Source: Rebecca billardiae RCC1528 (Eukaryota; Protista; Haptophyta). Taken from it: DNA of 64,000 bases. The notes below the pieces were generated by a model. The model was not told where the DNA came from and made no database searches. It saw only the letters and a program-made list of their open reading frames with translations. Made by a program: the position numbers and the translations under genes. This document shows, in pieces, positions 28,458 to 60,106 of this stretch. The stretch is taken from assembly GCA_965240325.2 (NCBI GenBank), contig OZ251222.1, positions 1,984,001 to 2,048,000 of the forward strand. The letters are read 5' to 3'. The first letter of the stretch is position 1. Every line of letters begins with the position of its first letter.

Positions 28458-28555
28458 CGTGATGCTTCTTGCTGAAGTGCTCCGGTTGCTGGTGGTCCGC
28501 CGCCGGAACTGGGTGATGCAGCTGGATTGCAGGAATCGAAACGGCTGCGCCGGAA

Positions 28556-32787: not shown

Positions 32788-33089
32788 GGCGAGGCCGCGC
32801 GGCAAGCGCCGTCGATGTGGGCAAGAGAGAGGGCTGGGCCGGGGTGCCTGCCTTGCGGAGTTGCGCGGCGCTTTCAGCTTCGCGCGGCACCCCAAGCTGG
32901 TCAGGAGTCCGGGGTCCGACGTACGGCGGAAGCTTGGCCGCCTCGGCGTTGTTCCCGGACTCCTTCCTTTACGCCGGCCCGGGCGGACGGCGCTGGCCAC
33001 GACGACGACGACGACGACGACGAGTTCGCCTTGAGCACTTGTCGATGATTGTGTGCCGCTCCCCGACGGCCGTGTTCCCGTCCAGCGCC

Positions 33090-37375: not shown

Positions 37376-37753
37376 AGGCCACCCCGCCAGCCCGGCGCGC
37401 GGCGCCCAAGTCACGTTTCTCTCGGGCCGCACGTCGGCCACGCGCCACTTGATCGCCATCCTGCCGCCACCAGCCGCTGTGCGGGGCGCCTGGCGGCGGA
37501 ACAACACCCCGTGGAACGGGTGGCTCCATACCCCTGAACTTATTAATTAATACTGAATGAATACTGTTACGGGAAAGGATGGATGCCGCATCATGTAAAA
37601 GTCTCGTACTGTATCATGTTCCCAGTTCCATATTCATCGCTGTATTCATTAGCATCCATTGTTGATCAGCGCAGGCATTCTATTTATTGGCGGTGGTGAT
37701 TGTTGAGGGGCTGAGGGCTTGACAGTGAGGCATTGTTGAGCCGGCGGCATTTG

Positions 37754-37795
37754 TACAGTTTACTAAGAATAAGAGACGCACACAGCTCAGGCAGG
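37754..37795 (-). repeat. 42-bp dispersed element, copy 2
   Basis: Exact reverse complement of 830-871. Confidence 0.9.
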
Positions 37796-37881
37796 TAGCA
37801 CTCTGATGAATAGTGGCAGATGTGATTCCCAGCGGTTCCCGCCACGATCGCCCGCGCCCCGCCCATCCTTGGCCTCGCACC

Positions 37882-40800
37882 ATGCCTGCCCTCGTGGGTT
37901 TGGGGGGCGTCCTAACGCTCGTCGTGGCGGCGCCGCACCCGGGCCTGCTGCTGCGCGGGAGCTGCGCGGGTGGAATCCTGCAGATCGCGTCAGGCAGCCA
38001 GCACACCTGCGTCGTCTACGACACTGGCCTGGCGAGATGGTGCGTACCACGTCACTGCGTGCGCGGCTGTGCGCGCACCCCATGTGTTGCCAAGAGGGCT
38101 GGTTGGCTCGTTGCGATTCGGCCCCGCTCAGCCCATTGCGTCTGCGCGCGCCACTGACGCACGAGCTACGCGGCGACCCCCCGCGCGGCGAGCAGCTTCG
38201 GCTTGGGCAGCGCAGGTCAGCTCGGCTACGACGCAGCCGATGACCTCGGCGACGACGAGAACGAGGTTGGCCCTGGCCTTGCCTACCTCACCATGCCCAC
38301 GGCCACCACGATCTCATCCCTGTCGGCCGGCGGGCTACACACGTGCGCGGTGCTCTCGGACGCAACAATTCGATGGTGCGTGCCGCGTGCCAACCACCGC
38401 GAGCCGCTCGTGTGCGGAGCAGCTGGATCTGATGGAGCACGCTCACGCTGGGTGCGCTCCGCGCGCGCGCTGCGCCGGCGGACCGCCCTCCCCCTCGCCA
38501 CAGCTGGGGCTCGAACGCGAAGGGCCAGCTCGGGACGGGAGATACCATCAGCGCCGGTGATGGCAGCGGTCGCGCTATGGGCAACACGCTGCCCGCGGTC
38601 AACCTGAATGGCTCCGCCACGCCGCTCACTGTGCGCTGTGGGAAGGAGCACACGTGTGCGCTCACCACAATCTCGTCCGTGCTCGGCGTGCAGTGCTGGG
38701 GCAAGGCGACCAAGGGCGAGCTGGGGTACGAGGATGTGGCCGTCCGCTCTACGCCCGGGCCCCACCTCGACTTTGGCACTGGGCTGACCGTCAGCACTCT
38801 CAGCTCGCACCTCGGCGAACACAACTGCGTGCTCTTCACTGACGGCTCTGTCAAGTGGTGCGGCGCAGCGCACAGGCGCGCCCCACGAGCGACCAGCGCG
38901 GTGCGACGCGTGACGAGGCGCCTGGCGCGCGCCCCCGTCGTTCACGCGCTCGCGCGCCGCGTGGCGCGCGCGCCCCACACCCGCGCAGCTGGGGCGAGAA
39001 CAACGCCGGCCAGCTGGGCACATCCGACGTGATTTCATACGGTGATGTGGGATCCACGATGGGGGACAACCTGCCCGCGGCCCTGCCTGCCGGCTCGGCC
39101 GTGGAGGTGGAGGTGGGCAAGGAGCACACGTGCGCGCGCTTGAGCGCCGGCGGGCTGAAGTGCTGGGGCAAGGGCGGGCAAGGGCGGCTGGGCAGCGGCG
39201 ATACGCCGGGCACGCTCAGCGACCCGTCCACAGCGGTGGTGTTCGATCTCGGCGCGAGCTACAGCGCAACAGCGATCCAGATGGGCAATCAGCACAGCTG
39301 CGCGCTGCTCACAGCCGGCGCCGTGAAGTGGTGCGTGGCACGCGCGCCCGCTACCCTGCTGACCAGCGGGGCGTGCGTACGCTGCGTGCGCGGACGGTGC
39401 CATCGCGCGCGCCTGCGGCACCATCAGCGCCACCGTGCGGCGTGCGTCCGCACACGGCGCGCGCCGGCCCTCGGTCGTGCTCACCGCCGCTCGTGACGCC
39501 CCGGCCTGCGCGACCGGCTGTGCTGCGCGCGCTCGCGCGACGCTCCGCGACATTCGCGGCGGTGCCGCGGCTCACCTGCGCAGCTGGGGCTCCGCGGCCA
39601 GTGGCCAGATCGGCACCGGCGACAGCGATGACCGCGGCAGCAGCTCGGGCGAGATGGGAGACGCACTGAAGCCCATCCGGCTCGGCACCGGCCGGAGCGG
39701 GCTGCTCATCAGCACCGGGCTCCTGTTCACCTGCGTCGCGACGGACGACGACGACGTCCGATGGTGCGCGCGCGCCTCCGCCGCCGTGCGCGCGCCGCGC
39801 CCTGCACGCCGGGAGACGGCCGCCCGCCCGCGCGTGCCTCTAGCCGGAGCGTGGCCGCGCGCCGCCTGCGTTGGTGGCTGCAGTTGCGCGCGAGCAGCCT
39901 CTGCGTGCAGCGTGCGCCAGGGAAATGCGCGGCGAGCCACCCTAGAGTGTGTGCTCAGCAGCAGCGGGCGCCATCTTCGCAACTGACGGCCTCCCACACA
40001 CGCGCGCTGCTTGCCCGCCGCGCGGCAATCTCTCGACCTGACCCGCGCCCGCGCGCGCAGCTTCGGCGATCCGGCCAAAGGAGCGCTCGGCACCGGAGAT
40101 GCCGAGACGCGCGGGGACGACGACGAGACCATGGGGAATGCTCTACCTGCCATCGGGTTGGCGCCACCGCCGTCCCCGCCCTCGCCGCCACCGAGCCCGC
40201 CGCCCTCACCACCGCCGAGCCCGCCGCCGAGTCCACCGCCAAGTCCACCGCCGCCGAGCCCGCCGCCATCTCCGCCGCCGTCGCCCCCGCCTTCACCACC
40301 GCCGAGCCCTCCACCGTCGCCACCGCCGAGCCCACCGCCGAGCCCGCCGCCGTCGCCGCCGCCGAGCCCGCCGCCGAGCCCGCCGCCATCGCCGCCTCCG
40401 TCGCCGCCTCCGCCGAGCCCGCCGCCTTCGCCACCACCGTCGCCGCCACCAAGCCCGCCACCCAGCCCGCCACCCTCGCCGCCACCGAGCCCGCCACCCT
40501 CGCCGCCACCCTCGCCACCGCCATCGCCTCCGCCAAGCCCGCCGCCCTCGCCACCGCCGAGCCCGCCGCCTCCGAGCCCGCCGCCAAGCCCGCCGCCATC
40601 ACCGCCGCCGAGCCCGCCGCCAAGCCCGCCGCCCTCGCCACCGCCGAGCCCGCCGCCAAGCCCGCCGCCGAGCCCGCCGCCCTCGCCACCGCCGAGCCCG
40701 CCGCCGAGCCCACCGCCAAGTCCACCGCCGCCGAGCCCACCACCATCTCCGCCGCCGTCGCCCCCGCCTTCACCACCGCCGAGCCCTCCACCGTCGCCAC

Positions 40801-43800
40801 CGCCGAGCCCACCGCCGAGCCCGCCGCCGTCGCCGCCGCCGAGCCCGCCGCCGAGCCCGCCGCCATCGCCGCCTCCGTCGCCGCCTCCGCCGAGCCCGCC
40901 GCCTTCGCCACCACCGTCGCCGCCACCAAGCCCGCCACCCTCGCCACCACCCTCGCCGCCACCCTCGCCGCCGCCAAGCCCGCCACCCTCGCCCCCGCCG
41001 TCGCCGCCACCGCCCAGCCCACCACCATCGCCGCCACCGTCGCCGCCGCCAAGCCCGCCGCCAAGCCCGCCGCCATCACCACCGCCGAGCCCGCCGCCCT
41101 CGCCACCGCCGAGCCCGCCGCCTCCGAGCCCGCCGCCAAGCCCGCCGCCATCACCGCCGCCGAGCCTGCCGCCGAGCCCGCCACCCTCGCCACCGCCGAG
41201 CCCGCCGCCGAGCCCGCCGCCGAGCCCGCCGCCCTCGCCACCGCCGAGCCCGCCGCCAAGCCCGCCGCCGAGCCCGCCGCCCTCGCCACCGCCGAGCCCG
41301 CCGCCGAGCCCACCGCCAAGTCCACCGCCGCCGAGCCCGCCACCATCTCCGCCGCCGTCGCCCCCGCCTTCACCCCCGCCGAGCCCTCCACCGTCACCGC
41401 CGCCGAGCCCACCGCCGAGCCCGCCGCCGTCGCCACCGCCAAGCCCGCCGCCAAGCCCGCCGCCAAGCCCACCGCCGTCGCCGCCTCCGCCGAGCCCGCC
41501 GCCTTCGCCACCACCGTCGCCGCCACCAAGCCCGCCACCCAGCCCGCCACCCTCGCCGCCACCGAGCCCGCCACCCTCGCCGCCACCCTCGCCACCGCCA
41601 TCGCCTCCGCCAAGCCCGCCGCCCTCGCCACCGCCGAGCCCGCCGCCTCCGAGCCCGCCGCCAAGCCCGCCGCCATCACCGCCGCCGAGCCCGCCGCCGA
41701 GCCCGCCGCCCTCGCCACCGCCGAGCCCGCCGCCAAGCCCGCCGCCGAGCCCGCCGCCCTCGCCACCGCCGAGCCCGCCGCCGAGCCCACCGCCAAGTCC
41801 ACCGCCGCCGAGCCCACCACCATCTCCGCCGCCGTCGCCCCCGCCTTCACCACCGCCGAGCCCTCCACCGTCGCCACCGCCGAGCCCACCGCCGAGCCCG
41901 CCGCCGTCGCCGCCGCCGAGCCCGCCGCCGAGCCCGCCGCCATCGCCGCCTCCGTCGCCGCCTCCGCCGAGCCCGCCGCCTTCGCCACCACCGTCGCCGC
42001 CACCAAGCCCGCCACCCTCGCCACCACCCTCGCCGCCACCCTCGCCGCCGCCAAGCCCGCCACCCTCGCCCCCGCCGTCGCCGCCACCGCCCAGCCCACC
42101 ACCATCGCCGCCACCGTCGCCGCCGCCAAGCCCGCCGCCAAGCCCGCCGCCATCACCACCGCCGAGCCCGCCGCCCTCGCCACCGCCGAGCCCGCCGCCT
42201 CCGAGCCCGCCGCCAAGCCCGCCGCCATCACCGCCGCCGAGCCTGCCGCCGAGCCCGCCACCCTCGCCACCGCCGAGCCCGCCGCCGAGCCCGCCGCCGA
42301 GCCCGCCGCCCTCGCCACCGCCGAGCCCGCCGCCAAGCCCGCCGCCGAGCCCGCCGCCCTCGCCACCGCCGAGCCCGCCGCCGAGCCCACCGCCAAGTCC
42401 ACCGCCGCCGAGCCCGCCACCATCTCCGCCGCCGTCGCCCCCGCCTTCACCCCCGCCGAGCCCTCCACCGTCACCGCCGCCGAGCCCACCGCCGAGCCCG
42501 CCGCCGTCGCCACCGCCAAGCCCGCCGCCAAGCCCGCCGCCAAGCCCACCGCCGTCGCCGCCTCCGCCGAGCCCGCCGCCTTCGCCACCACCGTCGCCGC
42601 CACCAAGCCCGCCACCCAGCCCGCCACCCTCGCCGCCACCGAGCCCGCCACCCTCGCCGCCACCCTCGCCACCGCCATCGCCTCCGCCAAGCCCGCCGCC
42701 CTCGCCGCCGCCGAGCCCACCGCCTCCGAGCCCGCCGCCAGGCCCGCCGCCATCACCGCCGCCGAGCCCGCCGCCGAGCCCGCCGCCCTCGCCACCGCCG
42801 AGCCCGCCGCCGAGCCCGCCGCCGAGCCCGCCGCCCTCGCCACCACCGAGCCCGCCGCCGAGCCCACCGCCAAGTCCACCGCCGCCGCACCCGCCACCAT
42901 CTCCACCGCCGTCGCCCCCGCCTTCACCCCCGCCGAGCCCTCCACCGTCGCCGCCGCCGAGCCCACCGCCGAGCCCGCCGCCGTCGCCGCCGCCGAGCCC
43001 GCCGCCGAGCCCGCCGCCATCGCCGCCTCCGTCGCCGCCTCCGCCGAGCCCGCCGCCGTCGCCACCACCGTCACCGCCGCCGAGCCCGCCACCCAGCCCG
43101 CCGCCCTCGCCGCCACCGAGCCCGCCACCCTCGCCGCCACCCTCGCCACCGCCATCGCCTCCGCCAAGCCCGCCGCCCTCGCCACCGCCGAGCCCGCCGC
43201 CTCCGAGCCCGCCGCCAAGCCCGCCGCCATCACCGCCGCCGAGCCCGCCGCCGAGCCCGCCGCCCTCGCCACCGCCGAGCCCGCCGCCAAGCCCGCCGCC
43301 GAGCCCGCCGCCCTCGCCACCGCCGAGCCCGCCGCCGAGCCCACCGCCAAGTCCACCGCCGCCGAGCCCGCCACCATCTCCGCCGCCGTCGCCCCCGCCT
43401 TCACCACCGCCGAGCCCTCCACCGTCGCCGCCGCCGAGCCCACCGCCGAGCCCGCCGCCGTCGCCGCCGCCGAGCCCGCCGCCGAGCCCGCCGCCATCGC
43501 CGCCTCCGTCGCCGCCTCCGCCGAGCCCGCCGCCGTCGCCACCACCGTCGCCGCCGCCGAGCCCGCCACCCAGCCCGCCACCCTCGCCGCCACCGAGCCC
43601 GCCACCCTCGCCGCCACCCTCGCCACCGCCATCGCCTCCGCCAAGCCCGCCGCCCTCGCCACCGCCGAGCCCGCCGCCTCCGAGCCCGCCGCCAAGCCCG
43701 CCGCCAAGCCCGCCGCCGAGCCCGCCGCCAAGCCCGCCGCCCTCGCCACCGCCGAGCCCGCCGCCGAGCCCACCGCCAAGTCCACCGCCGCCGAGCCCGC

Positions 43801-46800
43801 CACCATCTCCGCCGCCGTCGCCCCCGCCTTCACCACCGCCGAGCCCTCCACCGTCGCCGCCGCCGAGCCCACCGCCGAGCCCGCCGCCGTCGCCGCCGCC
43901 GAGCCCGCCGCCGAGCCCGCCGCCATCGCCGCCTCCGTCGCCGCCTCCGCCGAGCCCGCCGCCGTCGCCACCACCGTCACCGCCACCGAGCCCGCCACCC
44001 AGCCCGCCGCCCTCGCCGCCACCGAGCCCGCCACCCTCGCCGCCACCCTCGCCACCGCCATCGCCTCCGCCAAGCCCGCCGCCCTCGCCACCGCCGAGCC
44101 CGCCGCCTCCGAGCCCGCCGCCAAGCCCGCCGCCAAGCCCGCCGCCGAGCCCGCCGCCAAGCCCGCCGCCCTCGCCACCGCCGAGCCCGCCGCCAAGCCC
44201 GCCGCCAAGTCCACCGCCGCCGAGCCCGCCACCATCTCCGCCGCCGAGCCCGCCGCCCTCACCACCGCCGAGCCCGCCGCCGTCGCCGCCACCAAGCCCG
44301 CCACCCTTGCCACCACCATCACCACCGCCATCGCCACCTCCAAGCCCACCACCCTCGCCGCCGCCGTCGCCACCTCCTCCGAGCCCGCCGCCATCGCCGC
44401 CGCCATCGCCGCCGCCGAGTCCTCCGCCGAGCCCACCACCGAGCCCGCCACCATCACCGCCGCCGTCGCCCCCGCCGAGCCCTCCTCCGCCGTCGCCGCC
44501 GCCATCGCCACCACCTAGCCCGCCGCCGAGCCCGCCGCCGAGCCTGCCTCCATCGCCGCCGCCGAGCCCGCCGCCATCGCCGCCGCCATCGCCGCCGCCA
44601 CCAAGCCCGCCGCCTTCGCCACCGCCGTCGCCACCGCCGAGCCCGCCGCCAAGCCCTCCACCGAGCCCGCCACCATCACCACCGCCGTCACCCCCGCCAA
44701 GTCCACCACCTTCGCCACCGCCCAGCCCGCCGCCCAGCCCGCCACCTCCCTCACCGCCGCCCTCACCACCACCAAGCCCGCCGCCAAGCCCGCCGCCGTC
44801 ACCGCCGCCAAGCCCGCCACCCTCCCCTCCGCCCAGCCCCCCGCCGAGCCCCCCGCCGCCTTCTCCTCCGCCCTCGCCCCCACCATCGCCGCCGCCATCA
44901 CCACCACCGTCACCACCGCCGAGCCCGCCGCCGAGCCCTCCGCCCTCGCCCCCACCCTCGCCGCCGCCCTTGCCGCCGCCCGTACCGCCGCCAAGCCCAC
45001 CACCGAGCCCGCCACCACCGAGTCCACCACCCTCACCGCCACCATCGCCACCACCAAGCCCCCCGCCGTCACCGCCGCCGCCATCGCCGCCGCCATCGCC
45101 ACCGCCCTCGCCACCGCCGTCACCCCCACCCTCGCCGCCACCCTCGCCACCACCCTCACCGCCTCCCAGTCCACCGCCCTCACCTCCGCCTCGCCCGCCA
45201 CCGAGCCCGCCGCCATCTCCACCGCCGTCGCCGCCACCGGGCCCGCCACCGTCGCCGCCGCCGCGCCCGCCGCCATCACCACCACCGAGCCCACCGCCGA
45301 GCCCGCCGCCAAGCCCACCACCGTCGCCACCGCCGAGCCCACCGCCATCACCACCACCGAGCCCGCCGCCGAGCCCGCCGCCAAGCCCGCCGCCGTCGCC
45401 GCCACCAAGCCCGCCGCCGAGCCCGCCGCCGAGCCCGCCGCCGTCGCCGCCGCCGAGTCCACCACCAAGCCCACCACCGAGCCCACCACCGAGCCCGCCG
45501 CCGTCGCCGCCGCCCAGCCCGCCTCCCAGCCCGCCGCCGAGTCCGCCGCCTTCGCCACCACCGAGCCCGCCGCCGTCGCCGCCGCCGAGCCCGCCGCCGA
45601 GCCCGCCACCGAGCCCGCCGCCGTCGCCGCCGCCGAGTCTACCACCAAGCCCACCACCGAGCCCGCCACCGAGCCCGCCGCCGTCGCCACCGCCCAGCCC
45701 GCCGCCGAGCCCACCACCATCACCACCGCCGAGCCCACCACCATCACCACCACCGAGCCCACCGCCAAGCCCGCCGCCAAGCCCACCACCGTCGCCACCG
45801 CCTAGTCCGCCACCGAGCCCGCCGCCGTCGCCGCCGCCGAGCCCACCGCCATCACCACCACCGAGCCCACCGCCGAGCCCACCGCCAAGCCCGCCGCCGT
45901 CGCCGCCGCCAAGCCCACCGCCATCACCACCACCGAGCCCACCGCCGCGTCCACCGCCCAGCCCGCCACCCAGCCCACCACCCAGCCCACCGCCGAGCCC
46001 GCCGCCGTCGCCGCCGCCAAGCCCACCGCCATCACCACCACCGAGCCCACCGCCAAGCCCGCCGCCAAGCCCACCACCGTCGCCACCGCCAAGCCCGCCA
46101 CCGAGCCCGCCGCCCTCGCCACCGCCAAGCCCGCCGCCAAGCCCGCCGCCAAGCCCACCGCCGTCGCCGCCGCCCAGCCCGCCACCCAGCCCACCACCCA
46201 GCCCACCGCCGAGCCCGCCGCCGTCTCCGCCGCCAAGCCCACCGCCATCACCACCACCGAGCCCACCGCCGAGTCCGCCGCCCAGCCCGCCGCCATCGCC
46301 GCCACCAAGCCCACCGCCATCACCACCACCGAGCCCACCGCCGAGCCCGCCGCCCTCGCCACCGCCAAGCCCGCCACCAAGCCCGCCGCCAAGCCCACCG
46401 CCGTCGCCGCCGCCCAGCCCGCCACCCAGCCCACCACCCAGCCCACCGCCGAGCCCGCCGCCGTCGCCGCCGCCAAGCCCACCGCCATCACCACCACCGA
46501 GCCCACCGCCGAGTCCGCCGCCCAGCCCGCCGCCATCGCCGCCACCAAGCCCGCCGCCAAGCCCACCGCCAAGCCCACCGCCGTCGCCGCCGCCCAGCCC
46601 GCCACCCAGCCCACCACCCAGCCCACCGCCGAGTCCGCCGCCGTCGCCGCCGCCAAGCCCGCCGCCATCACCACCACCAAGCCCACCGCCGAGCCCGCCG
46701 CCCTCGCCACCGCCAAGCCCGCCACCGAGCCCGCCACCAAGCCCGCCGCCGAGCCCGCCGCCGTCGCCGCCGCCGAGCCCGCCACCCAGCCCGCCGCCGA

Positions 46801-49800: not shown

Positions 49801-52800
49801 CGCTCAACGGCACGAGCCGCGCGCGCTGCGTCACGCCGCCTTGGAACGGCAGCGTGACGTCGGTGGCGCTCGCGCTCGGCCGCGTGTCGAGCGCGGGCGG
49901 CGAGGGCGGCGGCGGCGGCGGCTTTGGCGGCGGTGCGCTCTGGGCTGCGCAGCGCACCACCACCGCTGGCGCGCCGCCTCTGTTCGAGTTGTACGACGAG
50001 TCTCAGCTGCGCGTCCTCCGCGTCACGCCCGAGCGCGGCCCAGCGCGCGTGGCCACCGTGCTCTCTGTGGGCGGCGCGGGCGCGCTGCTCGGAGGGGCAC
50101 ACGTGCGCTTCGCGTTTGGCTCGGCGCTCGCGCGGCCGCCGCTGGTCGTGTCAGTTGGCAGCGGCACCGTGCTGCAGCACGCCTCGTACGCGCGCGCCGA
50201 CGGCGGCGGCGCGGCCGGCGGCGGCGTGCGCGCGCAGCTGTTGGTCTCGCTCAACGGGCAGCAGTTCGCGCCGCGAACGCCGGACGGGCCGGGCGCCGTG
50301 TACTTTGAGTTTGACGAGGCGGCACACGCGCCCGACCTCGAGAGCGCGCACTTCGACGCGGCCAGCGGCGCGGCGCTGCTGCTGCGCTTCGACGCGCAGC
50401 CGACCGACCGCGCGGGGATGGGCGGCGGCCTCGGGCCGTGCGCGCCGCTGCTCGACGACGAGACGCTCGCGCTGCTGCGCGGCGACGCGCCGCCCTCCGA
50501 GCCGCCGCCGCGCTGCCGCTGGCGTGACGACTCGACCCTCGAGGCGCGGCTCGGCGCGGGCACGCGCGCCGCGCCCGGCATGCGCGTCGGCGTGCGCGCG
50601 GGCGCGGTGCGGCCCGCGGCGTGCGCGTGGGCCGCGTGCGCGCCAGACGCGGCGGCGGGCAACGACGCCGCGTCCGTGCTCGTCGACCCCGACGCGCCGT
50701 GCGGCGACGCGGCGCCGTGCCCGACGCCCGTCGCGCGGCTGCGCGCGCCGTCGACCATCTCGGCGTGCGCCAACGAGAGCGTCGTCCTCGACGGCGCCGC
50801 GTCGAGCGCCGGCGGCGTGGGCGCGCCTGCCTTCAGCTGGGCGGTGGACGTGACCGCGTCGGGCGCGGGCGCGGCGCGCGCGGGCGCGGCGCTGCGCGCG
50901 CTGCCGCCCACCGCCTCGCTCGCGCGGCTTGACGGCCTCCCCGCCGCCACGTCCGCCCGCGGGTTCGTCGTCGCGCTGCGCGTCACTTCCTTCCTCGGCG
51001 CGAGATCGGATCTGGCGTGGGCGGAGGTGCGGCGCGCGGCGCAGCCGAGCCCGAGCGTGGGCATCGACGGCGCGCCCGCGAGCGCGGTGCGCGCGGCGGC
51101 GGCGCTCACGCTGAGCGCGCGCGTGCACGCGCTCGCGCCGTGCTGGCCGGCGGAGCGCTCGCGCCGCGTCAGCTTCCGCTGGCGCCTCGTCGGCGTGACG
51201 CGACTCGACGACGGCGGCGGCGCGGACGGCGGCGCGCCCGCGCTGCCCGACGTGGCCGCGCTCGGCGCCGGCCCGGTGCTGCGGCTGCCCGGCCACACGC
51301 TCAGCCCCGGGCACGCGTACACGCTCGAGCTGGGCGCGGCGATGGCGGACGAGCCGAGCGCGTCGGCCAGCGCGACCGCCACCATCCTCGTGCGACCGGC
51401 GGAGCCGCCTTCCGCCGTGCTGGGCGCGCGCTCGGTGCGTGTGGGCGAGCGTGAGCCGGTAGTCGCGGACGCGTCGGGCAGCTTCGACCCGAGCACGGGC
51501 GAGGCCGCCGCCCTCGCGTTCGAGTGGTCGCTGCGCGACGCGGCGAGCGGCGCGGCGCTGCCGCTGCCGCCCAACGCGACCGCCTCCGGAAGCGGCGGCG
51601 GCGGCGGCGACACCGGCGGCGGCGCCGTGCTTCGGCTCCCGGCCGGCTGGCTGGGCGCAGGTGTGTACACGGTGCGTGTCAGCGTCTCGCTGCAGCCGCC
51701 GGCTGCGCGCGCGGGCGGTGCGAGCGCGAGCATGGAGGTGGAGGTGGTGGCGGACGCCTCCTCGCCGCCCGCCGTGACCCTCGCGCCGCTGCCGTTCGGC
51801 GGCGGCGGCGTCAATCCCACGTGGCGCCTCCCCTCCGAGCGGCTCTACATCAGCGCGCGCTCGCCGCTCGACACGGCCGCGTATGCTTACGCGTGGCGCG
51901 CGCTCGAGCCCGCGCCCGGCGGCGGCGGCGAGCTGGTGCCCTCGGCGCTGTGGCTGGGCGACGCGGTACGCACGACGGTCTCGGGCGCCTCAGGCCCCAC
52001 GCTCGCCTTCCGCAGCGGCGCGCTCGCGCCGGGCGCGCAGTACATCTTCGAGCTGAGCGTGCGGCGCGTGACGGATGCGACGGACGCGCCCGCAGGCGTG
52101 GCGCGCGTGGCCGTGCGCGTGAGCAGCCCGCCGCACGGCGGCAGGCTGGCGGTGTGGCCGAGCGCCGCCACGACGGCCGGCGCCGAGGAGCTGGCCGGCG
52201 GCAGCAGCCGCGGCGAGAACCTTGTCCTCGCCGTCGGCTTGGGCGAGGGCGTCGAGCTGGCCGCGCTCGGCTGGACCGTCGGCGGCGGCGGCGGCGGCGG
52301 TGCGGAGGACGAGCTGCCGCTCAGCTACGCGTTCGAGTACTCACGTGAGTACGGGTACTCACATGAGTACGACCCGGCCGGGTACGGCGCGCCCAACGGC
52401 AGCGCGGCGGCGGGCGCGGCGGGCGCGGTGCCGCTGAGCGCCTTCGCCGCGGACAGCCCGACGCTCAGCGCCGTGCTGCTGCCGCCTGGCGCGCTGCGCC
52501 TCAGCGTGCGCGTGGTGAGCGCGGGCGGCGCGGAGGCGAGCGCGGCCGCGGCGCTCGAGGTGGCGGCGCCGCCGCGCGCGGCGCTGGACGAGGCGGCGCT
52601 CGACGCGCTGGTGGGGAGCGCGCGCGACGCGCTCGAGCGCGCGGACGCGCCCGCCGCGCTCCGGCTCGTCACCGCCCTCGCGCAGCTCGACGCCGCCGCG
52701 CCGCCGCCGACGCGCGCGCTGCTCGAGCTGACGCGCGCCGCGGGCGCGCTCCTGCCGCCGGTGGCCGAGTCGCGCGCGCAGCCACGCCGCCGCGCTCGCC

Positions 52801-55800
52801 GCGGTGGCGGAGGCGCGCGCGGGCGCGGCTCTCGACTGGGACGGCGTGGCGCAGGCGGAGACGGTCGAGCAGGCCGCCGCGCTCGCGCGCGCCGCGCTCG
52901 CCGCCGGCGCGGGCATCGACGGCCCAACCGCTGAGGCGCTCGTCCGCGCGGCCGACCGGGCGCTGCTCGCCAACGCGACGCGCGGCGTGGGTGTTCCCGA
53001 CTCGGTGGCGGTGGGCCTCGCGACGCTGGAGCTGGCGACGACGCTGACGCGCGCGCTGCTGGCGGGGGCCGTGCCCGGCGAGCCCGCCGTGCAGCTCACC
53101 GGCGTCGCGCTCAGCCTCGCCGCCGCGCGCGTGCACCCGGCCACCCTAGAAGCCTTGGCCGACGCCGCGGCGGGCGCGGCGGCGGCGGAGCGCTCGGCTT
53201 GGCTGGAGCTGGGTGGCGCGGCGGGCGCGGTGCGCGTGCCGGCCTCGGCGCTCGCCGCGCAGCACGGCGCATTGCTCAGCGCGGGCGCCGACGGCGCGGT
53301 CGACGTCGTGCTCTCCGCGATCGTCACGCGCGAGATCGACGTCGAGATGGCGCTGCGCAACGCGACGGCGCGGCCGGGCGGCGGCTCGGCGGCCGAGGCG
53401 GCGCTCGCGGCGGCCGCGCGCGAGCGCGGCGGCGGCGTGGCGACGGCTGTGCTCTCGGCGTCGCTGTATGCGCCGGGCGCGCCGGCGTCGCTGTCGGTGC
53501 GCGGGCTGGCCGAGCCGGTGCTGCTGCAGCTGCCCCCGCTCCTCGGCAGCGCGGCCATCCCCGGACTCGCCGACGGCCGCGTCGGCTGCCGCTTCCTCGA
53601 CGAGGGTGCGCGCGCGTGGCGCGCTGACGGCTGCGCGGCGGTCGACGCCCCACCGGGCCGCGATGCAAACTCTCTGTACTGCGCGTGCGACCACCTCACC
53701 ACGTTCGCCGGGCTCGGGCTGCCCGCCTCCGAGGCGGAGGCGGCGGCGGACGCCGAGGCCGTGCGCGTGAACACCTTTGGCGCTGATGCCGCGGCGGCGG
53801 TCCTTCTCAAGCCGGGCGCGAGCGCGCGTGACAACCCGACCGTTTTCCGGCTGGTCTATTTGCTCGCCGGGGCGAACGGCCTGGCGCTGGGGGTGGCGCT
53901 GCTCGCGGACCGGCGCGCGCGCGCGGAGTACGAGCGGTGGCATGCGTCCGAGCTGAAGACGGCCGGGATGCTCCCGCCGAGCACGAGCGCGCGCGGCGGC
54001 GGCGGCGGCTCGATGTGCAGCGCATTGTCCACCACCGCCTCCTCCGCCTCCTCCTCCGCCTCTTGCGCGAGTGCGAGCAGCGGCCGCGGCGGCGGCGGCG
54101 CGAGCGTGGGCGACGGCTGCGTGCTCGCGTGCGCGCCGCTTTGCCCGCACCCCGCCGCGGGGGAGCCGAGCACGGTGGAGGTGGTGCGGCAGCGGAAGCG
54201 GCAGGCGGAGGCGCGGCAGAGAGAGGCGGACGCGGAGGCGGCTGCCGAGGCCGCGGCCGCGGCCGAGGCCGAGGCCGACGCCCCCGCCGGCCCGGGCGCG
54301 CACGCGGGCATCCCTCGCAGCCGCGCGCTCAGCCGCCGCCTCGTCTCGGCGCGCGCCGGCGCCAGCAGGGCGCTGCCTCCCCGCGACTCGCTCCGATCCG
54401 CCGCGTCGAGCGAAGCCGGGGCCGAGGCCACGGACGACGCCGACGCGGCCGCGCGGCCGCGCCGCGCCGTCGTCACTTCCACGGGCGCAGCGGAGGCGGC
54501 CAGGCTGCGCGCGCGCGCCGCGGCGCGCGCCGCGGCGCGCGCCCGGCGCGCGCGCGCGCTCGCCTTCGTGCAGCGCGTGGCGGACGAGCACCCGCTGCTG
54601 CTGCTGCTCTTCGCGCCGGCGGCGCGCGGCGTGCGCAAGGCGGAGCTGGTGCAGAGCCTCTTCAGCATGGCCGCCCTGCAGCTCGCCATCGAGTGCTTGC
54701 TGTATGACGCGGGCGCGGACGGCGGCGGCGGGCGCGCGCTCACCGTTGCGCTGTATGCGCTGCTGGGCGCGGCGATCGCGGCGCCCGCGCTCTTCGGCTG
54801 CCGCGCCGCGTGGGCGCTCGCGCACGTGGCCGAGGCGCTCAGCCCGCCGCAGCGGCTGTTCAGTGCACTCAGCGCCGCGCTCGAAGGACGGCTGCGCCTC
54901 GCGGCCGGCGGGCGCGCCGCGCGGCTAAGTGCCATCGTGGAGTCGGCGAGCGAGCTCGCCGGCATCCGCGGCGCGGTGTTGGTTGAGCTCGCGGAGGAGG
55001 AGGAGGGGGGGGAGGGCGGCGGCGCTGCACGCGTCGGAGCGGGCGCGCCGGCCGCGGCGCAGCTCGGCGCGGGGCACTCGGGCGGCGCTCCGCGTCGCTG
55101 GAAGCAACTGGCCGCGGCCGTGAACGACCCTGGCAGCTGCGGCGCGCCGCTGGGCCGCGCGGGGATGATACTGCTCGGCCGTACGCAGCCGGAGGCGGCG
55201 CTCGGCGCCGCGCACCCACTCCCACGCGGCGGCAGCTCTCCGTCCGCGCACGAGCCGGAAGGCTTGGCGCGTGGCTCGGAGCGGTGCGCGCCAGCCGACG
55301 CAGGCGCAGGCCGCGTGATGCCCGTGCGCGGCGGGCCCACGCGAGACTTTGCGCCCGCCGCCCGCTCCGCGGAGGCCGAGGCCGAGCGCGCCACGGCTGG
55401 CGGCGGCGGCGGAGAGTTGGAGCGCACGGCGCGTCGCGGCACGTCTGCGCGCCCTCCGCTCTCCGCGGGCACGGGCGTCGCGCTGAGCGGCTCCAGCATC
55501 GTCGCACCCTTGCAGCGGCCGCGCAGCGCGCTCGCCCAGCTTATCGCCGCTGCCGAGGGTGAGAGGAAGGCGCGCTCGGAGGAGGAGGAGGAGGAGGAGG
55601 AGCGGGCCTGCGAGGGTGGCTGCGAGGGTGCGGGCCTGCGGCGCCCGCCGAGCGCGGCATCGCGCGAGCTGAGCCGCGCCGGCACCGGCGCCGCCGCTGG
55701 CTGCGAGCGCACGCGCCCGCGGAGCGCTGGCGCGGGCCCAGCGGCCGCGGCCGCGCGCGCGCTCCTGTCACCGCGCCGCGCGCCCCGGCTGAGTGACGAG

Positions 55801-57939
55801 GGCTCGGCCAGCGGGGCCGGGCTCACGCCGGGAGGCACGCCGCCGCCCGCGTCGCCGCCGCCCTCGCCACCGCCGCCGCGCCGCAGCTGCCGCATGCCGC
55901 CGCCGCCGCGGCCCGTGGAGACCACCAGCATCACTGCCGCTGCGCCGCCCAACAGCGGCTCGGCGCGCCGCACGGCGGGTCGGCTGCAGCCACCGCCTGC
56001 GCCGCACACGGGCGCGCAGGGCAAGGCGCCACCCTGCCGTGCTGCCGCGCCGGGCACGGCGCGCGCCGCGCCGCGCCGCGCGCCGCTGCCTCCGCCCACG
56101 TCGGTTTCTCTGGGCAGCGCGCAGTACGTGCCGCCTGCGCGCACAGCGTGGGCGACCAGCGCTGCGGCCAGCGCGCACGCGGCCGCATCCGCAGACCGGG
56201 AGGTCGCTCGCGCCGCGGCGGCGGCCGTGGCGCCGGCGGCGGCGGCGGCGGCGGCTCCGCCGGACGCGGGCCGGTCCTCGGACGCGCCGCCGCGCCTCAC
56301 GCGGCCAAGCACCGCCTCACCACGCGTCGGCGTCGGCGGCGGTGGCGGGAGCAAGCACGGGGGCAAGGGGGCGGAGGATGGTTCGGCTGCTCGGCCGCCG
56401 ACCGCTCCGCTGCCCAGTGCGCCCGCGGCCGCGCCAGCGCCGACTGCCGAGCAGGAGCAGCCGCCGGCGCGCGCCCTGGCAGCCACGCCGGCGGCGGCGC
56501 CGCCGCCGGCGACTCGCCCCGCGGAGCCGGGCGCGAGCCCGCCGCCCGCCGCGCGCCGCGCGCAATGCACAGCGCCAAGTGCGAGCGCACTCGCGCTCGC
56601 GCTCGCCGGCCGAGGCCCAGGCTCGGAGGCGTCGGGCCACAGCTCTCCGACAGGCTGCGACTCGTGTGCACCCGACGCCGCGGCCAAGCCCGAGGCACCG
56701 CCGCTGCCGCCGCGCGCCGCTCCCATCCTGAGCAGCGGCCTCGTGAGCGCGCGCTGCACGCGCCAGGAGTGGAGTCTAGAGCCGCGCGCCCGCACGCCGC
56801 CCGCGCACGGCGCCGAGCGCGGGGCGCACGCGAACGCGGACGCGCCGCTCGCCCTAGCGGCGACGGCGGCGGTGGCGGCGGCGGCGGCAGCTCCGCCCGC
56901 CGCGGTCAGCGCGAGTGCAGCGCCGCCGCACGCCGAGCCGGCTTTGGCGGCGCCCGCGGCGCTGGACACGGCACCACCTACTACGGCGACGCCCGTCGTG
57001 CGCGCGCAGCCGGCTGCCCAGTGGCCACCGGCCTCGGCCGCGCAAGCCCCGGCGGCATCGGAGCCCGCGGCGACGCCGCCGGCCGCGCTACCGCCGCAGC
57101 AGCACGACGCCACTGCCAGGAGCATGGCGCTGCCGTCAGCCTCGCCGTCCACCGCGGCGGCCTGGCCCGCCGCCACGAGCGTGACGGCGCGCCGGTTTGG
57201 CAACATCCGCGCGGCGCGCCGCGGCGCGGGTGTGCCGCACGCCTCCGCCGCGCGCTCGCCGCCGCCTCGCGCCGCCGCCTCCTCCTCCTCGCGCCGCTCG
57301 CGCCCGCCCGAGCTGACCGACCTCGAGCTGCTCGCGCTGCGCACGCTCATCCGGCTCTTCGAGTCGAACGGCGACGGCTGGCTCGGGCTGAGCGCGCTGC
57401 GGCTCCTGATGATCGAACTGGGCGACCCGATGACGACGCTCGAGCTGCGCCGGCTGCTGCGCGCCATCGGCGCGAGCAGCGGTGCGCGCGCGCCACGCGT
57501 GGTGGCGGACGAGCTGCACGTGGACCGCGACGCGCTCTGCGTGTGGTTTGCCAAGGCCAAGGCGGCGCACACGCGCGCAGAGCTCGCGCGCAAGCGCGCG
57601 CAGCGGGGCGCGCAGCACGTGCGCCCCGCGCTCGTGTGGGCGGCCATGCTGGGCAGCTTTGGCGGGCTGTGCGCGCTGGCCATCGTGTACGGCTCCGTGT
57701 TTGGCGAGGAGCGCACCGCGGCGATGGTCTCCTCATGGGGCCTCTCCCTCGCCGCGTCCCTCACCGTGCAGGACGGCCCGATCATGGCGCTGGGCAGCTG
57801 CTGCGGCGCCCTGCTGCGTCGCGCCCCCGCTGCCAGGGCGCGCCGTGCGGACTGCTACTGCTGCACGAGGCTAGGCATGGCGCTGCTGCGGGCAGCAGGG
57901 CAAGCGCTCGGCGCATGCCGGTTTCTCTTCCTCGGCTGA
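37882..57939 (+). CDS. Giant polycystin-1/REJ-like surface receptor (RCC1 propeller, (SP3)n stalk, IPT/REJ-like domains, GPS, multi-TM, EF-hand-like); exons 37882-38039, 38196-38375, 38504-38857, 38989-39330, 39584-39763 and 40061-57939, with an apparent frameshift at ~52770-52785
   Basis: Seven HTC..C(W/F)G..GQLG-type repeats after splicing; SPPP array; VTAVRPPLGPLGGGTVVTLEGRGF (IPT); DASGSFDP..FEWS and PPHGGRLAVWP..LPLSYAF (REJ-like); CRFLDE..W..DGC..CACDHLTTFA (GPS); hydrophobic helices; LFESNGDGWLGLSAL. Confidence 0.85.
40164..49220 (+). repeat. Coding (Ser-Pro-Pro-Pro)n minisatellite, 12-bp base unit with higher-order repeats
   Basis: Regular SPPP/SPPPP to ~48650, then degenerate Pro-rich sequence. 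Confidence 0.97.
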
Positions 57940-59697: not shown

Positions 59698-60106
59698 TCC
59701 ATCGTCAGCTGTTCCAGTGTCCTGCCCGGCCCCCGGGGCTGCCGATCGACCCGAGTTCATCAGCATTAAATTATTTAATAATAAGAAGTTCCAGCCGAAT
59801 AATAAGTATTAAGTTAATAAACTAATAAAGTTACCAGCCGGTCGTATTCGTAACACGTGTGACCGATCGGGTCAGATCGCGACGTCCTTGAATGCGATCA
59901 TCCGAGCAGGAAGACCAGCGGCGGGTGCGGATGACCGGATGGGCATGGCCAACACGGATCGCGGACAGTCATCGAGTGCGGTCGCCAGGATGCGCCCGCG
60001 TGCATCGCCTTCGACGCGGGGCGTCCAACCGTGCTCGCCGTGGCGCCGCGGGCGCACGCCCAGCTTGGCAGCGCCAGTGGCGGCGGCCGTTCATCACACG
60101 CCTGTC

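What the first reader, a model, noticed from the sequence alone, without database searches (positions are those of the whole stretch)
37882..57939. ~6,360-aa polycystin-1-like receptor with an RCC1 propeller on a micron-scale extensin stalk
Seen: a hydrophobic N-terminus, 7 RCC1-type repeats, ~3,000 Pro/Ser residues, IPT and REJ-like beta domains, an intact GPS motif (H-L|T at 53692-53700), about 5 TM helices, a large loop and an EF-hand-like motif. Known: GPS/GAIN autoproteolysis and REJ define polycystin-1 and adhesion-GPCR-type receptors. Polyproline II rises about 0.31 nm per residue, so the stalk could reach roughly 0.9 um. Inference: a cleavable, long-range adhesion or mechanosensing antenna (prey, mate, substrate or virus contact) combining a plant-like HRGP rod with animal-like polycystin signalling. 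I do not recognise this architecture as described.
Basis: partly seen in the sequence, partly recalled or inferred. Interest (0 to 1): 0.9.

Follow-up and report, generated by a model that had tools for sequence, protein, structure and literature searches.

The report
Giant stalked polycystin-1-like surface protein
A very GC-rich haptophyte alga (Pavlovales) has one gene for a surface protein of about 6,360 residues: a seven-bladed propeller head on a Ser-Pro-Pro-Pro rod of about 3,000 residues, anchored by the channel-less front half of a polycystin-1-type receptor. That combination is not described in the papers I could search, and nothing shows yet that the gene is expressed.

Summary
Window 37882-57939 (+) reads as one gene:
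- a hydrophobic N-terminus;
- seven RCC1 repeats in six exons, with five introns at the same Cys codon;
- about 2,990 residues of SP3 (671 units);
- a TIG-like region and a REJ domain (Pfam E 6e-20);
- a GAIN domain with intact C-x-C-x-H-L|T-x-F (H-L-T at 53692-53700), whose model matches adhesion-GPCR GAIN structures (Foldseek E 5e-9);
- four clear and one marginal transmembrane (TM) helix.

A model of the family's 5-TM base matches TM1-5 of human polycystin-1 best (Z 16.5, 8z6b_A). PLAT and the channel half (TM6-11) are absent.

Caveats:
- The frame breaks by +1 at 52770-52785 in a CG run. Homologues are collinear across it, so it is either an assembly or allelic indel or a null allele.
- The EF-hand pair and IQ-like motif of the paralogues are degenerate in this copy.
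- The 0.9 um length is an upper bound that assumes a glycosylated polyproline II (PPII) rod.
- No sequencing run was listed, so there is no RNA evidence.

Relatives are Pavlovales 'REJ/EF-hand domain-containing' proteins (41% identity or less). In Pavlovales sp. CCMP2436 a Pro-rich run abuts such a gene in frame.

The scan noted the same layout before at ten or more other loci of this genome, with RCC1, LRR or lectin heads. Design precedents are Chlamydomonas MST3 and the sexual agglutinins. Verdict: new variant of a known kind.

The parts
37882..38039 (+). Exon 1: start codon, hydrophobic signal-like N-terminus, first strand(s) of the propeller
   Evidence: first ATG after an upstream stop; low-GC spacer at 37401-37900 just upstream
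38040..40060 (+). Exons 2-5 (38196-38375, 38504-38857, 38989-39330, 39584-39763) and five introns (38040-38195, 38376-38503, 38858-38988, 39331-39583, 39764-40060). All introns read GTGCG...CAG and are phase 2 inside the Cys codon of C[WF]G
   Evidence: spliced product in frame, 7 repeats; Pfam RCC1 and RCC1_2; UVR8 and HERC hits
40061..40181 (+). Start of exon 6: seventh RCC1 repeat (CFGDPAKGALGTGD...), running straight into the Pro array
40182..49142 (+). Ser-Pro3 array, about 2,990 residues. The regular part is 40185-48658 (period 12 nt, 698 copies); a degenerate Pro-rich tail runs to about 49140
   Evidence: DNA is only about 70% identical at lag 12 (mixed AGC/TCG/TCA and CCG/CCA codons); longest exact internal repeat is 1007 bp (40623 vs 41700)
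49599..49865 (+). TIG/IPT-like domain (weak), inside a beta-rich region of about 650 residues (about 49.3-51.2 kb) that is collinear with the 2-4 TIG domains of homologues
   Evidence: Pfam TIG E 0.006; homologues TIG E 1e-12 to 1e-28; collinear phmmer/tblastn alignments
51282..52169 (+). REJ domain
   Evidence: Pfam PF02010 E 5.7e-20, 71.8 bits; 251 homologues, 30 with E<=1e-30
52770..52785 (+). Frame break: downstream codons are shifted +1, inside tcgcgcgcgcagccac
   Evidence: P0004 residues 3-1117 align in the upstream frame to 52865 and 1133-1878 in the downstream frame from 52741
52804..53720 (+). GAIN domain (helical subdomain A plus beta subdomain B). GPS motif at 53587-53709; cleavage-site triad H-L|T at 53692-53700
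   Evidence: Pfam GPS 23.8 bits; invariant C262, G276, C293, H297, L298, T299 in 17 sequences; model pLDDT 75 and pTM 0.68; Foldseek top hits are the GAIN domains of BAI3, CELSR1, latrophilin, CD97, GPR110, GPR126 and GPR56; profile against PDB gives adhesion-GPCR GAIN, best E 6e-11
53851..54801 (+). TM1 (53851-53907), low-complexity cytosolic loop 1, TM2 (about 54646-54702), TM3 (54736-54801)
   Evidence: conserved EH.LL...RAE.VQ...IECLLY and PAL blocks
54802..57309 (+). Ala/Pro/Arg-rich cytosolic loop 2, about 835 residues. GC3 (G+C at third codon positions) is 0.82-0.89; unrecognised introns cannot be excluded
57310..57423 (+). Vestigial EF-hand pair
   Evidence: alignment A2; no Pfam EF-hand hit, whereas homologues give EF-hand_7 at E 1e-9 to 3e-11
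57628..57939 (+). TM4 (57628-57702), marginal TM5 (about 57721-57798), short tail and stop codon (57937-57939)
   Evidence: hhalign of this block to Ptychodera polycystin-1-like, probability 88%

Best explanation
This is one nuclear gene of a pavlovophyte haptophyte. It encodes a type-I-oriented surface protein of about 6,360 residues, built as head, rod and base.

Head: a seven-bladed RCC1-like beta-propeller with two conserved Cys per blade, presumably the ligand-binding tip.

Rod: about 2,990 residues of Ser-Pro3 without Tyr or Cys. If it is hydroxylated and O-glycosylated as in green-algal HRGPs, it forms a free, non-crosslinked polyproline-II filament of up to about 0.9 um.

Base: TIG-like domains, a REJ module, a GAIN domain with an intact autoproteolysis site, and a 5-TM bundle of the polycystin-1 TM1-5 type. 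PLAT and the TM6-11 channel-like half are missing.

Most likely mode of action (inferred): the protein is cut at H-L|T in the secretory pathway. The huge N-terminal fragment stays held non-covalently in the GAIN domain. The cell then carries a long fibril whose propeller tip binds a partner far from the membrane, and whose GAIN joint is a force-sensitive release or signalling point. The post-cleavage peptide T-x-FAG..VPTS...VNT is conserved across the family.

In paralogues, the cytosolic loops carry an IQ-like motif and an EF-hand pair, which points to Ca2+/calmodulin coupling. In this copy both are degenerate, so I lean slightly towards adhesion or structural tethering (about 55:45) over signalling.

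Shown by sequence or predicted fold: domain content and order, gene continuity, the GAIN fold, the PC1-type TM1-5 fold of the family, and a family restricted so far mostly to Pavlovales. Inferred: secretion, hydroxylation and glycosylation, rod length, cleavage, location and function.
For: One gene:
- Spliced RCC1 exons with five identical-phase GTGCG..CAG introns.
- Blade 7, the SP3 array and TIG-REJ lie in one ORF.
- Homologues P0004, P0151 and P0002 are collinear from TIG to the C-terminal TMs, across the frame break.
- GC3 is above 0.9 in the coding frames, and there is no internal low-GC spacer.

Domains:
- Pfam RCC1, REJ and GPS above their cut-offs.
- UVR8 and HERC hits.
- GAIN model and Foldseek hits, and the profile search against the PDB.

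Base:
- Conserved five-TM topology in 10 homologues.
- VIA-align rank 1 is polycystin-1 in 8z6b_A: Z 16.5, rmsd 3.9 A, 193 residues, PC1 3063-3610. The next rows are EF-hands at Z 11.7 or below.
- hhalign probability 88%, E 3e-6, to Ptychodera polycystin-1-like.

The array is not a collapsed perfect repeat: about 70% DNA identity between units, and two Ser codon families.

Stalk plus REJ base in another species: in Pavlovales sp. CCMP2436 a Pro-rich run abuts the annotated REJ protein in frame.

Long free PPII rods are physically plausible: the 429-residue N-terminus of MST3 measures about 146 nm (PMC11015965). Haptophytes have an ExAD-like GT47 (PMC5371791). A GH127 beta-L-arabinofuranosidase-like gene lies 2.4 kb upstream.
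Against: - The reading frame is broken at 52770-52785 in the assembly. I could not check reads, because no run was listed.
- No RNA or protein evidence of any kind.
- In DNA of about 80% GC, long ORFs stay open by chance, so the open 1,711-codon tail is weak evidence of function.
- EF-hands and the IQ motif are degenerate and TM5 is weakly hydrophobic in this copy.
- The N-terminus lacks a charged n-region.
- The 5-TM model is of a homologue (P0039), has a mean pLDDT of only 64.5 and rests on 9 sequences. Helical bundles can reach a Z of about 14 by chance (notes).
- Prolyl hydroxylation and arabinosylation in pavlovophytes are not shown.
- A 1007-bp exact repeat inside the array leaves its exact length open.
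Confidence: 0.6

Rival explanations
1. Same architecture, but this copy is a pseudogene or a null allele. The +1 frame break is real, translation ends at 52934 after an Arg-rich out-of-frame tail, and the product, if any, is a secreted head-rod-REJ protein with no GAIN or membrane anchor. The degenerate EF-hand, IQ motif and TM5 would be early decay.
For: Frame break in the assembly. Cytosolic motifs conserved in paralogues are lost here, and TM5 is marginal. Neighbouring sequence agrees 99.6-100% with independent Logan contigs, so the assembly is generally accurate. The scan notes many paralogues in this genome, so losing one copy would be tolerable.
Against: GC3 stays at 0.9 or above in the downstream frame. 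All GPS invariants, the four GPS cysteines, the post-cleavage peptide and the TM2, TM3 and TM4 signature blocks are intact. The break lies in a (CG)n run, where slippage or consensus errors are likely. The organism shows haplotype indels, so an intact allele may exist.
Confidence: 0.2
2. A purely structural one-gene hair or coat fibril. The rod is the functional part, for example a fine non-tubular flagellar hair or surface fibril of pavlovophytes. The PC1-type base is only an anchor and the head only a cap, with no signalling, analogous to the mastigoneme axial protein MST3.
For: The MST3 precedent for a poly-Hyp rod anchored by a polycystin-type membrane domain. Ca2+-sensing motifs are lost in this copy. 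There is no Tyr for wall cross-linking, which fits a free filament. An earlier scan follow-up proposed the same reading at another locus (s1-371904).
Against: The elaborate conserved REJ-GAIN module and the conserved tethered peptide are more than an anchor needs. According to unchecked scan notes, heads differ between paralogues (RCC1, LRR, lectin), which suggests recognition. No localisation data exist.
Confidence: 0.3
3. Gene-model artefact: two or three neighbouring genes (a secreted RCC1-SP3 glycoprotein, a REJ protein and a GPS-TM protein) are read as one because stop codons are rare at 80% GC.
For: All three + frames and the minus frames stay open across the array. The frame changes at 52.77 kb. 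There are no RNA data.
Against: No start, stop or low-GC spacer lies between the parts. The array keeps blade 7 and TIG-REJ in the same frame over 9 kb. Homologues carry TIG-REJ-GPS-5TM-EF in one protein and are collinear across the break. The CCMP2436 locus shows a Pro run fused in frame to REJ.
Confidence: 0.05
4. The array length, and therefore the 'micron scale', is an assembly artefact: the true array is much shorter or longer.
For: A 1007-bp exact internal repeat and higher-order units of 159, 477 and 600 nt. Only 20-46% of 21-51-mers are unique. The CCMP2436 assembly has gaps in its Pro run.
Against: Units are only about 70% identical at the DNA level, and 70% of 151-mers are unique, which is easy for long reads. 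The frame is preserved across the array. Unchecked scan notes list other loci with arrays of 2,500-2,950 aa.
Confidence: 0.1

Closest known systems
Polycystin-1 / PKD1 family, including sea-urchin REJ proteins (SpREJ1-10; PMC1934368)
   Same: A REJ module followed by GAIN/GPS immediately before TM1. The topology is TM1, cytosolic loop, TM2-3 hairpin, long cytosolic loop, TM4-5 hairpin. The predicted fold of the family's TM bundle matches PC1 residues 3063-3610. Heads are variable binding domains. SpREJs show that TM number varies from 1 to 11 within the family.
   Different: No PLAT domain in loop 1 and no TM6-11 channel-like half. No PKD (Ig-like) repeats, C-type lectin or LRR. Instead there is an RCC1 propeller and a Ser-Pro3 rod of about 3,000 residues. 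Paralogues carry an IQ-like motif and EF-hands in the loops. The organism is a haptophyte, not an animal.
Chlamydomonas mastigoneme axial protein MST3, and the cohort of poly-Pro proteins with an incomplete PKD domain (Dai et al. 2024, PMC11015965)
   Same: A single giant polypeptide whose glycosylated poly(hydroxy)proline PPII helix spans hundreds of nm outside the cell and is anchored by a polycystin-type membrane domain. The N-terminus is distal.
   Different: The MST3 anchor is a PKD2-like channel domain lacking S1, completed by SIP and joined to PKD2. Here the anchor is the PC1-type REJ-GAIN-TM1-5 half. MST3 has no REJ or GPS (0 occurrences in the paper) and no propeller head, and it is sheathed by MST1. 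No sequence relationship was found.
Chlamydomonas sexual agglutinins (cane-shaped flagellar HRGPs; PMC2113723)
   Same: A globular recognition head held outward on a long fibrous HRGP shaft, with the other end at the flagellar membrane. They are used for cell-cell adhesion.
   Different: As far as I recall, agglutinins are extrinsic proteins with no transmembrane, REJ or GAIN base. They are shorter (a few hundred nm), from a different lineage, and share no homology tested here.
Adhesion GPCRs
   Same: The GAIN domain fold and GPS motif (top structural and profile hits). A large adhesive N-terminal fragment. The tethered-peptide logic.
   Different: No 7-TM secretin-like domain. The membrane part is PC1-like.
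Plant and green-algal extensins
   Same: Ser-Pro3-4 repeats in a huge tandem array.
   Different: No Tyr-containing cross-link motifs. The array is not a wall protein but is fused to a receptor-type membrane base. Hydroxylation and arabinosylation are unproven in haptophytes.

Membership tests
PKD1 / polycystin-1 family | REJ module | tested here: met
   Pfam PF02010 E 5.7e-20, 71.8 bits against a cut-off of 25; homologues E 1e-39 to 1e-45
PKD1 / polycystin-1 family | GAIN domain with a GPS motif directly before TM1 | tested here: met
   Pfam GPS 23.8 against 22.5; invariant C..C.C.HLT.F; model matches GAIN structures at E 5.5e-9; TM1 starts 55 residues after the GPS
PKD1 / polycystin-1 family | PLAT/LH2 domain in the first cytosolic loop | tested here: not met
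   No PLAT hit in the window ORF or in P0151, P0002 or P0004. Loop 1 is low-complexity Ala/Ser/Arg
PKD1 / polycystin-1 family | N-terminal TM1-5 bundle | tested here: met
   Family model (P0039; the window sequence is in the alignment): VIA-align rank 1 is 8z6b_A polycystin-1, Z 16.5, 193 residues, PC1 3063-3610; hhalign 88% for TM4-5. Caveats: mean pLDDT 64.5, and TM5 is marginal in the window copy
PKD1 / polycystin-1 family | TM6-11 channel-like (PKD2-homologous) half | tested here: not met
   The protein ends 47 codons after TM5 (stop codon at 57937-57939). There is no PKD_channel hit, and downstream ORFs have no Pfam hit
Adhesion GPCR | 7-TM class B2 domain after GAIN | tested here: not met
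   Five TM helices with long loops; no 7tm_2 hit
RCC1-like beta-propeller | Seven tandem RCC1 repeats | tested here: met
   Seven C[WF]G...G[QEA]LG units of 54-64 residues; Pfam RCC1, RCC1_2 and RLD; UVR8 E 2e-17. The propeller fold itself was not modelled, because the spliced sequence has no reference
Extensin-type HRGP | Ser-Pro3-5 repeats | tested here: met
   671 SP3 and 35 SP4 units
Extensin-type HRGP | Tyr cross-linking motifs (YXY / VYK) | tested here: not met
   No Tyr in 2,987 residues
Extensin-type HRGP | Hyp formation and Hyp-O-arabinosylation / Ser-O-galactosylation | not testable with these tools
   Circumstantial only: an ExAD-like GT47 in haptophytes (PMC5371791) and a GH127-like neighbour gene
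MST3-type mastigoneme axial protein | PKD2-like pore domain lacking S1, completed by SIP | tested here: not met
   No PKD channel domain. The membrane part matches PC1 TM1-5 instead
EF-hand Ca2+-binding protein | Canonical 12-residue loop with an acidic residue at positions 1 and 12 | tested here: not met
   Loop 1 is ESNGDGWLGLSA (Ala at position 12). Loop 2 is disrupted by an insertion. No Pfam hit, although paralogues hit strongly

The most novel reading that the evidence does not exclude
Pavlovophyte algae carry a multigene repertoire of single-polypeptide, micron-long 'antenna' receptors. Interchangeable recognition heads (RCC1 propeller, LRR, lectin arrays) sit on glycosylated polyproline rods. 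Each is plugged into an autoproteolytic REJ-GAIN joint and a channel-less polycystin-1 TM1-5 base with Ca2+/calmodulin-sensing loops. Contact or drag at the tip, up to about 1 um from the cell, would be turned into shedding or intracellular signalling. That would be an ancient, non-animal use of the polycystin-1 front half as a stand-alone mechanosensory or adhesion module.
Probability: 0.3. Interest if true: 0.85.

Novelty: new variant of a known kind. Interest (0 to 1): 0.62.

Why it matters
If expressed as read, this would be among the longest rod-like single polypeptides known.

It would show that the REJ-GAIN-TM1-5 'front half' of polycystin-1 exists as an independent module outside animals. 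That bears on what this half does in human PC1, where its role is still debated.

It would extend the head, HRGP rod and polycystin-type anchor design, so far shown only for the Chlamydomonas mastigoneme, to a distant lineage with a different anchor. That suggests convergent or very old use of polyproline rods as molecular spacers.

It also shows that public annotations of pavlovophyte genomes truncate these genes, so the family is invisible in protein databases.

Practically, it gives candidate genes for the flagellar hairs or surface fibrils of haptophytes, and a natural system for studying force-dependent GAIN dissociation.

Tried and rejected
1. The search for homologous proteins on the TIG-REJ region (length class 2.4-7.5 kaa) and on the GAIN-TM region gave nothing. 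This is word-index blindness in Ala/Pro-rich sequence, because the exhaustive phmmer search then found 251 relatives.
2. The look-up of sequencing runs on 50000-56000 listed none. Read laying was therefore not used, and neither the frame break nor the array length could be checked in reads. Logan runs ERR14847148 and ERR14847151 do hold this genome, but the reads tool did not offer them, so I did not try them there.
3. My first guess was a green alga (volvocine HRGP). I rejected it: the best relatives and the Nop14 neighbour are from Pavlovales.
4. Is this Diacronema lutheri NIVA-4/92 itself? Unlikely. None of 7 neighbour proteins is in NCBI, two are exact only in Logan, and no D. lutheri Nop14 came up.
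5. A short intron at the frame break is rejected: the only GT..AG pair spans 21 nt.
6. Foldseek on the 5-TM model gave only EF-hand hits, and so did the sequence profile against the PDB. The PC1 match appeared only with the exhaustive structural aligner.
7. D. lutheri paralogue P0048 has no upstream Pro array, so not all family members are stalked. None of the top 40 database homologues has a giant Pro array.
8. ORFs downstream at 58.0-59.8 kb have no Pfam hit and look like a separate small gene, not further exons.
9. The protein-atlas search was busy.
10. The propeller could not be modelled, because the spliced sequence has no reference and I did not paste it.

Full report
**What is there**

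The window is very GC-rich (0.65-0.84). On the + strand, a 4,307-codon ORF (40011-52934) is followed by a 1,711-codon ORF in another frame (52804-57939).

G+C at third codon positions (GC3) marks the coding frame. It is 0.9-0.98 in the first frame from 49.2 to 52.8 kb. In the second frame it is 0.9-0.95 from 52.5 to about 55 kb and again from 57.0 to 57.9 kb, and 0.82-0.89 in between.

Upstream, RCC1-type repeats lie in three alternating frames. They join cleanly through five introns: 38040-38195, 38376-38503, 38858-38988, 39331-39583 and 39764-40060. Every intron begins GTGCG, ends CAG and splits the Cys codon of the repeat's C[WF]G motif after its second base.

The spliced head is 436 residues. 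It starts with a hydrophobic N-terminus (MPALVGLGGVLTLVVAAP) at the first ATG after an upstream stop, followed by seven repeats of 54-64 residues with two conserved Cys each. Pfam RCC1 (E 5.8e-10) and RCC1_2 (E 2.6e-9) pass their cut-offs. Exon 4 alone hits UVR8 (E 2e-17) and the HERC1/2 RCC1-like domains among solved structures.

**The rod**

The seventh repeat runs without interruption into LAPPPSPPSPPPS... The next roughly 2,990 residues are 2,222 Pro and 710 Ser, arranged as 671 SP3 and 35 SP4 units. There is no Tyr and no Cys, and only about 55 other residues.

At the DNA level it is a 12-nt tandem array (40185-48658, 698 copies) with only about 70% matches. Ser uses AGC, TCG and TCA; Pro uses CCG, CCA, CCC and CCT. 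Higher-order units of 159, 477 and 600 nt are about 80% alike. It is therefore not a collapsed perfect repeat.

The longest exact internal repeat is 1,007 bp (40623 vs 41700), and 70% of 151-mers are unique. Long reads would resolve it, but its exact length is unverified.

The array keeps blade 7 and the downstream TIG-REJ domains in the same frame. The long minus-strand ORFs across it are mirror artefacts of its composition.

At 0.31 nm per residue the array would span about 0.93 um. That figure is realistic only for a hydroxylated, glycosylated PPII helix. The 429-residue free PPII N-terminus of Chlamydomonas MST3 measures about 146 nm against a theoretical 133 nm (PMC11015965), so the per-residue rise has experimental support in green algae. 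For haptophytes I found only indirect hints: an ExAD-like GT47 (PMC5371791) and, 2.4 kb upstream in this window, a GH127 beta-L-arabinofuranosidase-like gene.

**The ectodomain base**

After the rod come a beta-rich region with one weak TIG hit (E 0.006) and a REJ domain (E 5.7e-20).

An exhaustive phmmer search with this 1,190-residue piece found 251 relatives, 30 of them at E<=1e-30. The best (34-42% identity) are:
- Diacronema lutheri KAG8459354.1 and KAG8462819.1 ('EF-hand domain-containing protein');
- D. lutheri KAG8461221.1;
- Pavlovales sp. CCMP2436 KAJ1635852.1 and KAJ1633484.1 ('REJ domain-containing protein');
- unnamed ENA and Logan proteins.

Remote hits include Mantamonas, the cryptophyte Hanusia, and Ptychodera polycystin-1-like. 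Pfam on three full-length homologues gives TIG (2-4 copies), REJ, GPS and a C-terminal EF-hand pair.

**The frame break**

The two big ORFs overlap at 52804-52934. tblastn shows P0004 residues 3-1117 aligned in the first frame up to 52865, and residues 1133-1878 in the second frame from 52741. P0151 and P0002 behave alike.

Read against the homologues, the text switches frame inside tcgcgcgcgcagccac (52770-52785) with no residues missing. No plausible intron exists there. It is an indel in a (CG)n run, and one of three things:
- a consensus error;
- an allelic variant, since the organism shows haplotype indels against independent Logan contigs;
- a real inactivating mutation.

No sequencing run was listed for this stretch, so I could not decide.

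**GAIN/GPS**

Pfam GPS passes its cut-off (23.8 against 22.5 bits).

In a 17-sequence family alignment, C262, G276, C293, H297, L298 and T299 are invariant and F301 nearly so. The window copy has all four GPS cysteines.

An AlphaFold2 model of 52804-53940 (pLDDT 75, pTM 0.68) shows a helical subdomain, a beta sandwich and a TM helix. Its top Foldseek hits are all GAIN domains: BAI3 (4dlo, E 5.5e-9), CELSR1, latrophilin, CD97, GPR110, GPR126 and GPR56. The family profile hits the same proteins by sequence, with a best E of 6e-11.

Cleavage itself is inferred.

**The membrane base**

Ten homologues and the window share one topology:
- TM1 about 52 residues after the GPS;
- a cytosolic loop;
- a TM2-TM3 hairpin;
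- a long loop with the EF-hands near its end;
- a TM4-TM5 hairpin at the C-terminus.

This is the topology of polycystin-1 TM1-5.

A model of the compact homologue P0039 (the alignment includes the window sequence; pLDDT 64.5, with TM helices at about 75-90) gave only EF-hand hits with Foldseek. The exhaustive VIA-align search ranked polycystin-1 of the PC1/PC2 complex first: 8z6b_A, Z 16.5, rmsd 3.9 A, 193 residues, model 39-503 against PC1 3063-3610. The next rows were EF-hands at Z 11.7 or below.

As I recall the UniProt annotation of human PC1, residues 3063-3610 hold TM1 to TM5. Independently, hhalign aligns the family's TM4-5 block to Ptychodera polycystin-1-like about 600 residues after its GPS (probability 88%, E 3e-6).

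There is no PLAT domain and no TM6-11 channel half, and the protein stops 47 codons after TM5. So the base is the front half of a polycystin-1, not a full one.

**This copy against its paralogues**

The family alignment shows an IQ-like motif (..IQR..RG...RR) in loop 1 and two canonical EF-hand loops in loop 2. In the window copy:
- the IQ motif is gone;
- EF loop 1 reads ESNGDGWLGLSA, with Ala at the Ca2+-chelating position 12;
- EF loop 2 carries an insertion;
- TM5 is only weakly hydrophobic;
- loop 2 is an Ala/Pro/Arg-rich stretch of about 835 residues with lower GC3, where unrecognised introns are possible.

The membrane signature blocks (EH.LL, RAE.VQ, IECLLY, PAL, SWG) are kept.

**One gene?**

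Low-GC, intergenic-like DNA (below 0.60) occurs at 37401-37900 and next at 59701-60000, with none inside. After the stop at 57939 there is about 0.6-1 kb of lower-GC sequence, then what looks like a separate small + strand gene with no Pfam hit. Together with ORF continuity and homologue collinearity, separate genes are unlikely.

**Organism and family context**

Neighbour genes in the window are TGT, Nop14, a BRK-domain protein, a GH127-like protein and a papain-like protease. Nop14 is closest to Pavlovales sp. CCMP2436 (56%).

Two neighbour proteins exist exactly only in Logan assemblies of runs ERR14847148 and ERR14847151, whose contigs match the window at 99.6-100%. The D. lutheri genome has 73% GC (PMC8379373), like this window. 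However, none of the looked-up proteins carries a D. lutheri accession. The source is therefore a pavlovophyte that is not in the annotated public set.

In the public CCMP2436 assembly, the annotated REJ protein KAJ1635852.1 starts inside a longer ORF. A Pro-rich run abuts its first Met in frame. A further SPPP-type run of about 370 residues lies just upstream, behind an assembly gap. The stalk-on-REJ design is thus not peculiar to this genome, and annotation hides it. D. lutheri P0048 has no such array, and none of the top 40 database homologues has a giant one.

Earlier notes of this scan report the same layout at ten or more other loci of this genome, with RCC1, LRR, lectin or FG-GAP/kringle heads. 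Three were followed up. These notes are unchecked, and I could not read those loci. If they are right, this gene is one member of a head-swapping family.

**Interpretation**

The architecture is shown by sequence and predicted fold. Its use is inferred.

I commit to a surface fibril with a binding propeller at its tip and a GAIN joint at its foot. The joint would be cleaved but held together, so that tension sheds the N-terminal fragment and/or exposes the conserved T-x-FAG..VPTS..VNT peptide, as in polycystin-1 and adhesion GPCRs (PMC9171645 and PMC11458180, listed).

Because the Ca2+/calmodulin motifs are degenerate here, adhesion or structural tethering is slightly more likely than signalling for this copy. 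The main rival is that the copy is a null allele or pseudogene.

**Comparison with known systems**

The gene is a member of the REJ/GPS (PKD1) superfamily by REJ, GAIN and TM1-5. It fails the PLAT and channel-half criteria.

It works like MST3 (a rod on a polycystin-type anchor) and like the Chlamydomonas agglutinins (a head on an HRGP shaft; PMC2113723), but it is homologous to neither in the parts tested.

Full-text searches for REJ/GPS in haptophytes and for HRGPs in haptophytes found no description of such proteins. I rate it a new variant of a known kind.

**Housekeeping**

Noticed in passing
window 33045-35438 (+): A 798-aa ORF with a GH127 beta-L-arabinofuranosidase catalytic domain (Pfam E 4e-42) lies 2.4 kb upstream of the giant SP3 gene. 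As I recall, GH127 enzymes of the HypBA1 type act on Hyp-linked beta-L-arabinofuranosides of extensins, so this may be a functional neighbour or plain coincidence.
   Followed up: partly
alignment A2 (family); window 54000-54600 and 57310-57423: Paralogues carry an IQ-like motif (IQRxxRGxxxRR) in cytosolic loop 1 and two canonical EF-hands in loop 2. This suggests Ca2+/calmodulin control of a PC1-type TM1-5 base. Both are degenerate in the window copy.
   Followed up: partly
L002:7100-10400 (Pavlovales sp. CCMP2436, MU631364.1): The annotated REJ protein KAJ1635852.1 begins inside a longer ORF, and a Pro-rich run abuts its Met in frame. A further SPPP-type run of about 370 aa, and a small repeated domain (VDGPALACKLAVFL...), lie upstream between assembly gaps (N runs at 8157-8166 and 9507-9791). 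The public gene model is truncated.
   Followed up: partly
window 40623-41629 vs 41700-42706: A 1007-bp exact direct duplication inside the SP3 array, so a recent internal expansion. The array also has higher-order units of 159, 477 and 600 nt in its first half and purer SP3 in its second half.
   Followed up: partly
window 23934-23944, 24184-24190, 28371-28479: An independent Logan contig (ERR14847148) differs from the window by 11-bp and 7-bp intergenic indels and a few SNPs, while a contig from ERR14847151 is identical. This points to haplotype or strain variation in the source organism.
   Followed up: partly
window 39572-49963 (-) and other minus-strand ORFs of 400-3,463 codons: Very long antisense ORFs across the array and the REJ region are by-products of about 80% GC and CCG periodicity, not genes.
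   Followed up: yes
window ~58474-59697 (+): A probable separate small gene downstream: a coiled-coil-like Ala/Arg-rich stretch, then a C-terminal part ending ...TEYWTRHMRMQLDGPY. It has no Pfam hit.
   Followed up: partly
window 8366-9565 (-), 13133-16354 (+), 29868-31808 (-), 62436-63998 (+): Neighbour genes: queuine tRNA-ribosyltransferase (TGT, E 9e-107, on the minus strand), Nop14 (E 1e-146), a BRK-domain protein, and a papain-family protease.
   Followed up: partly
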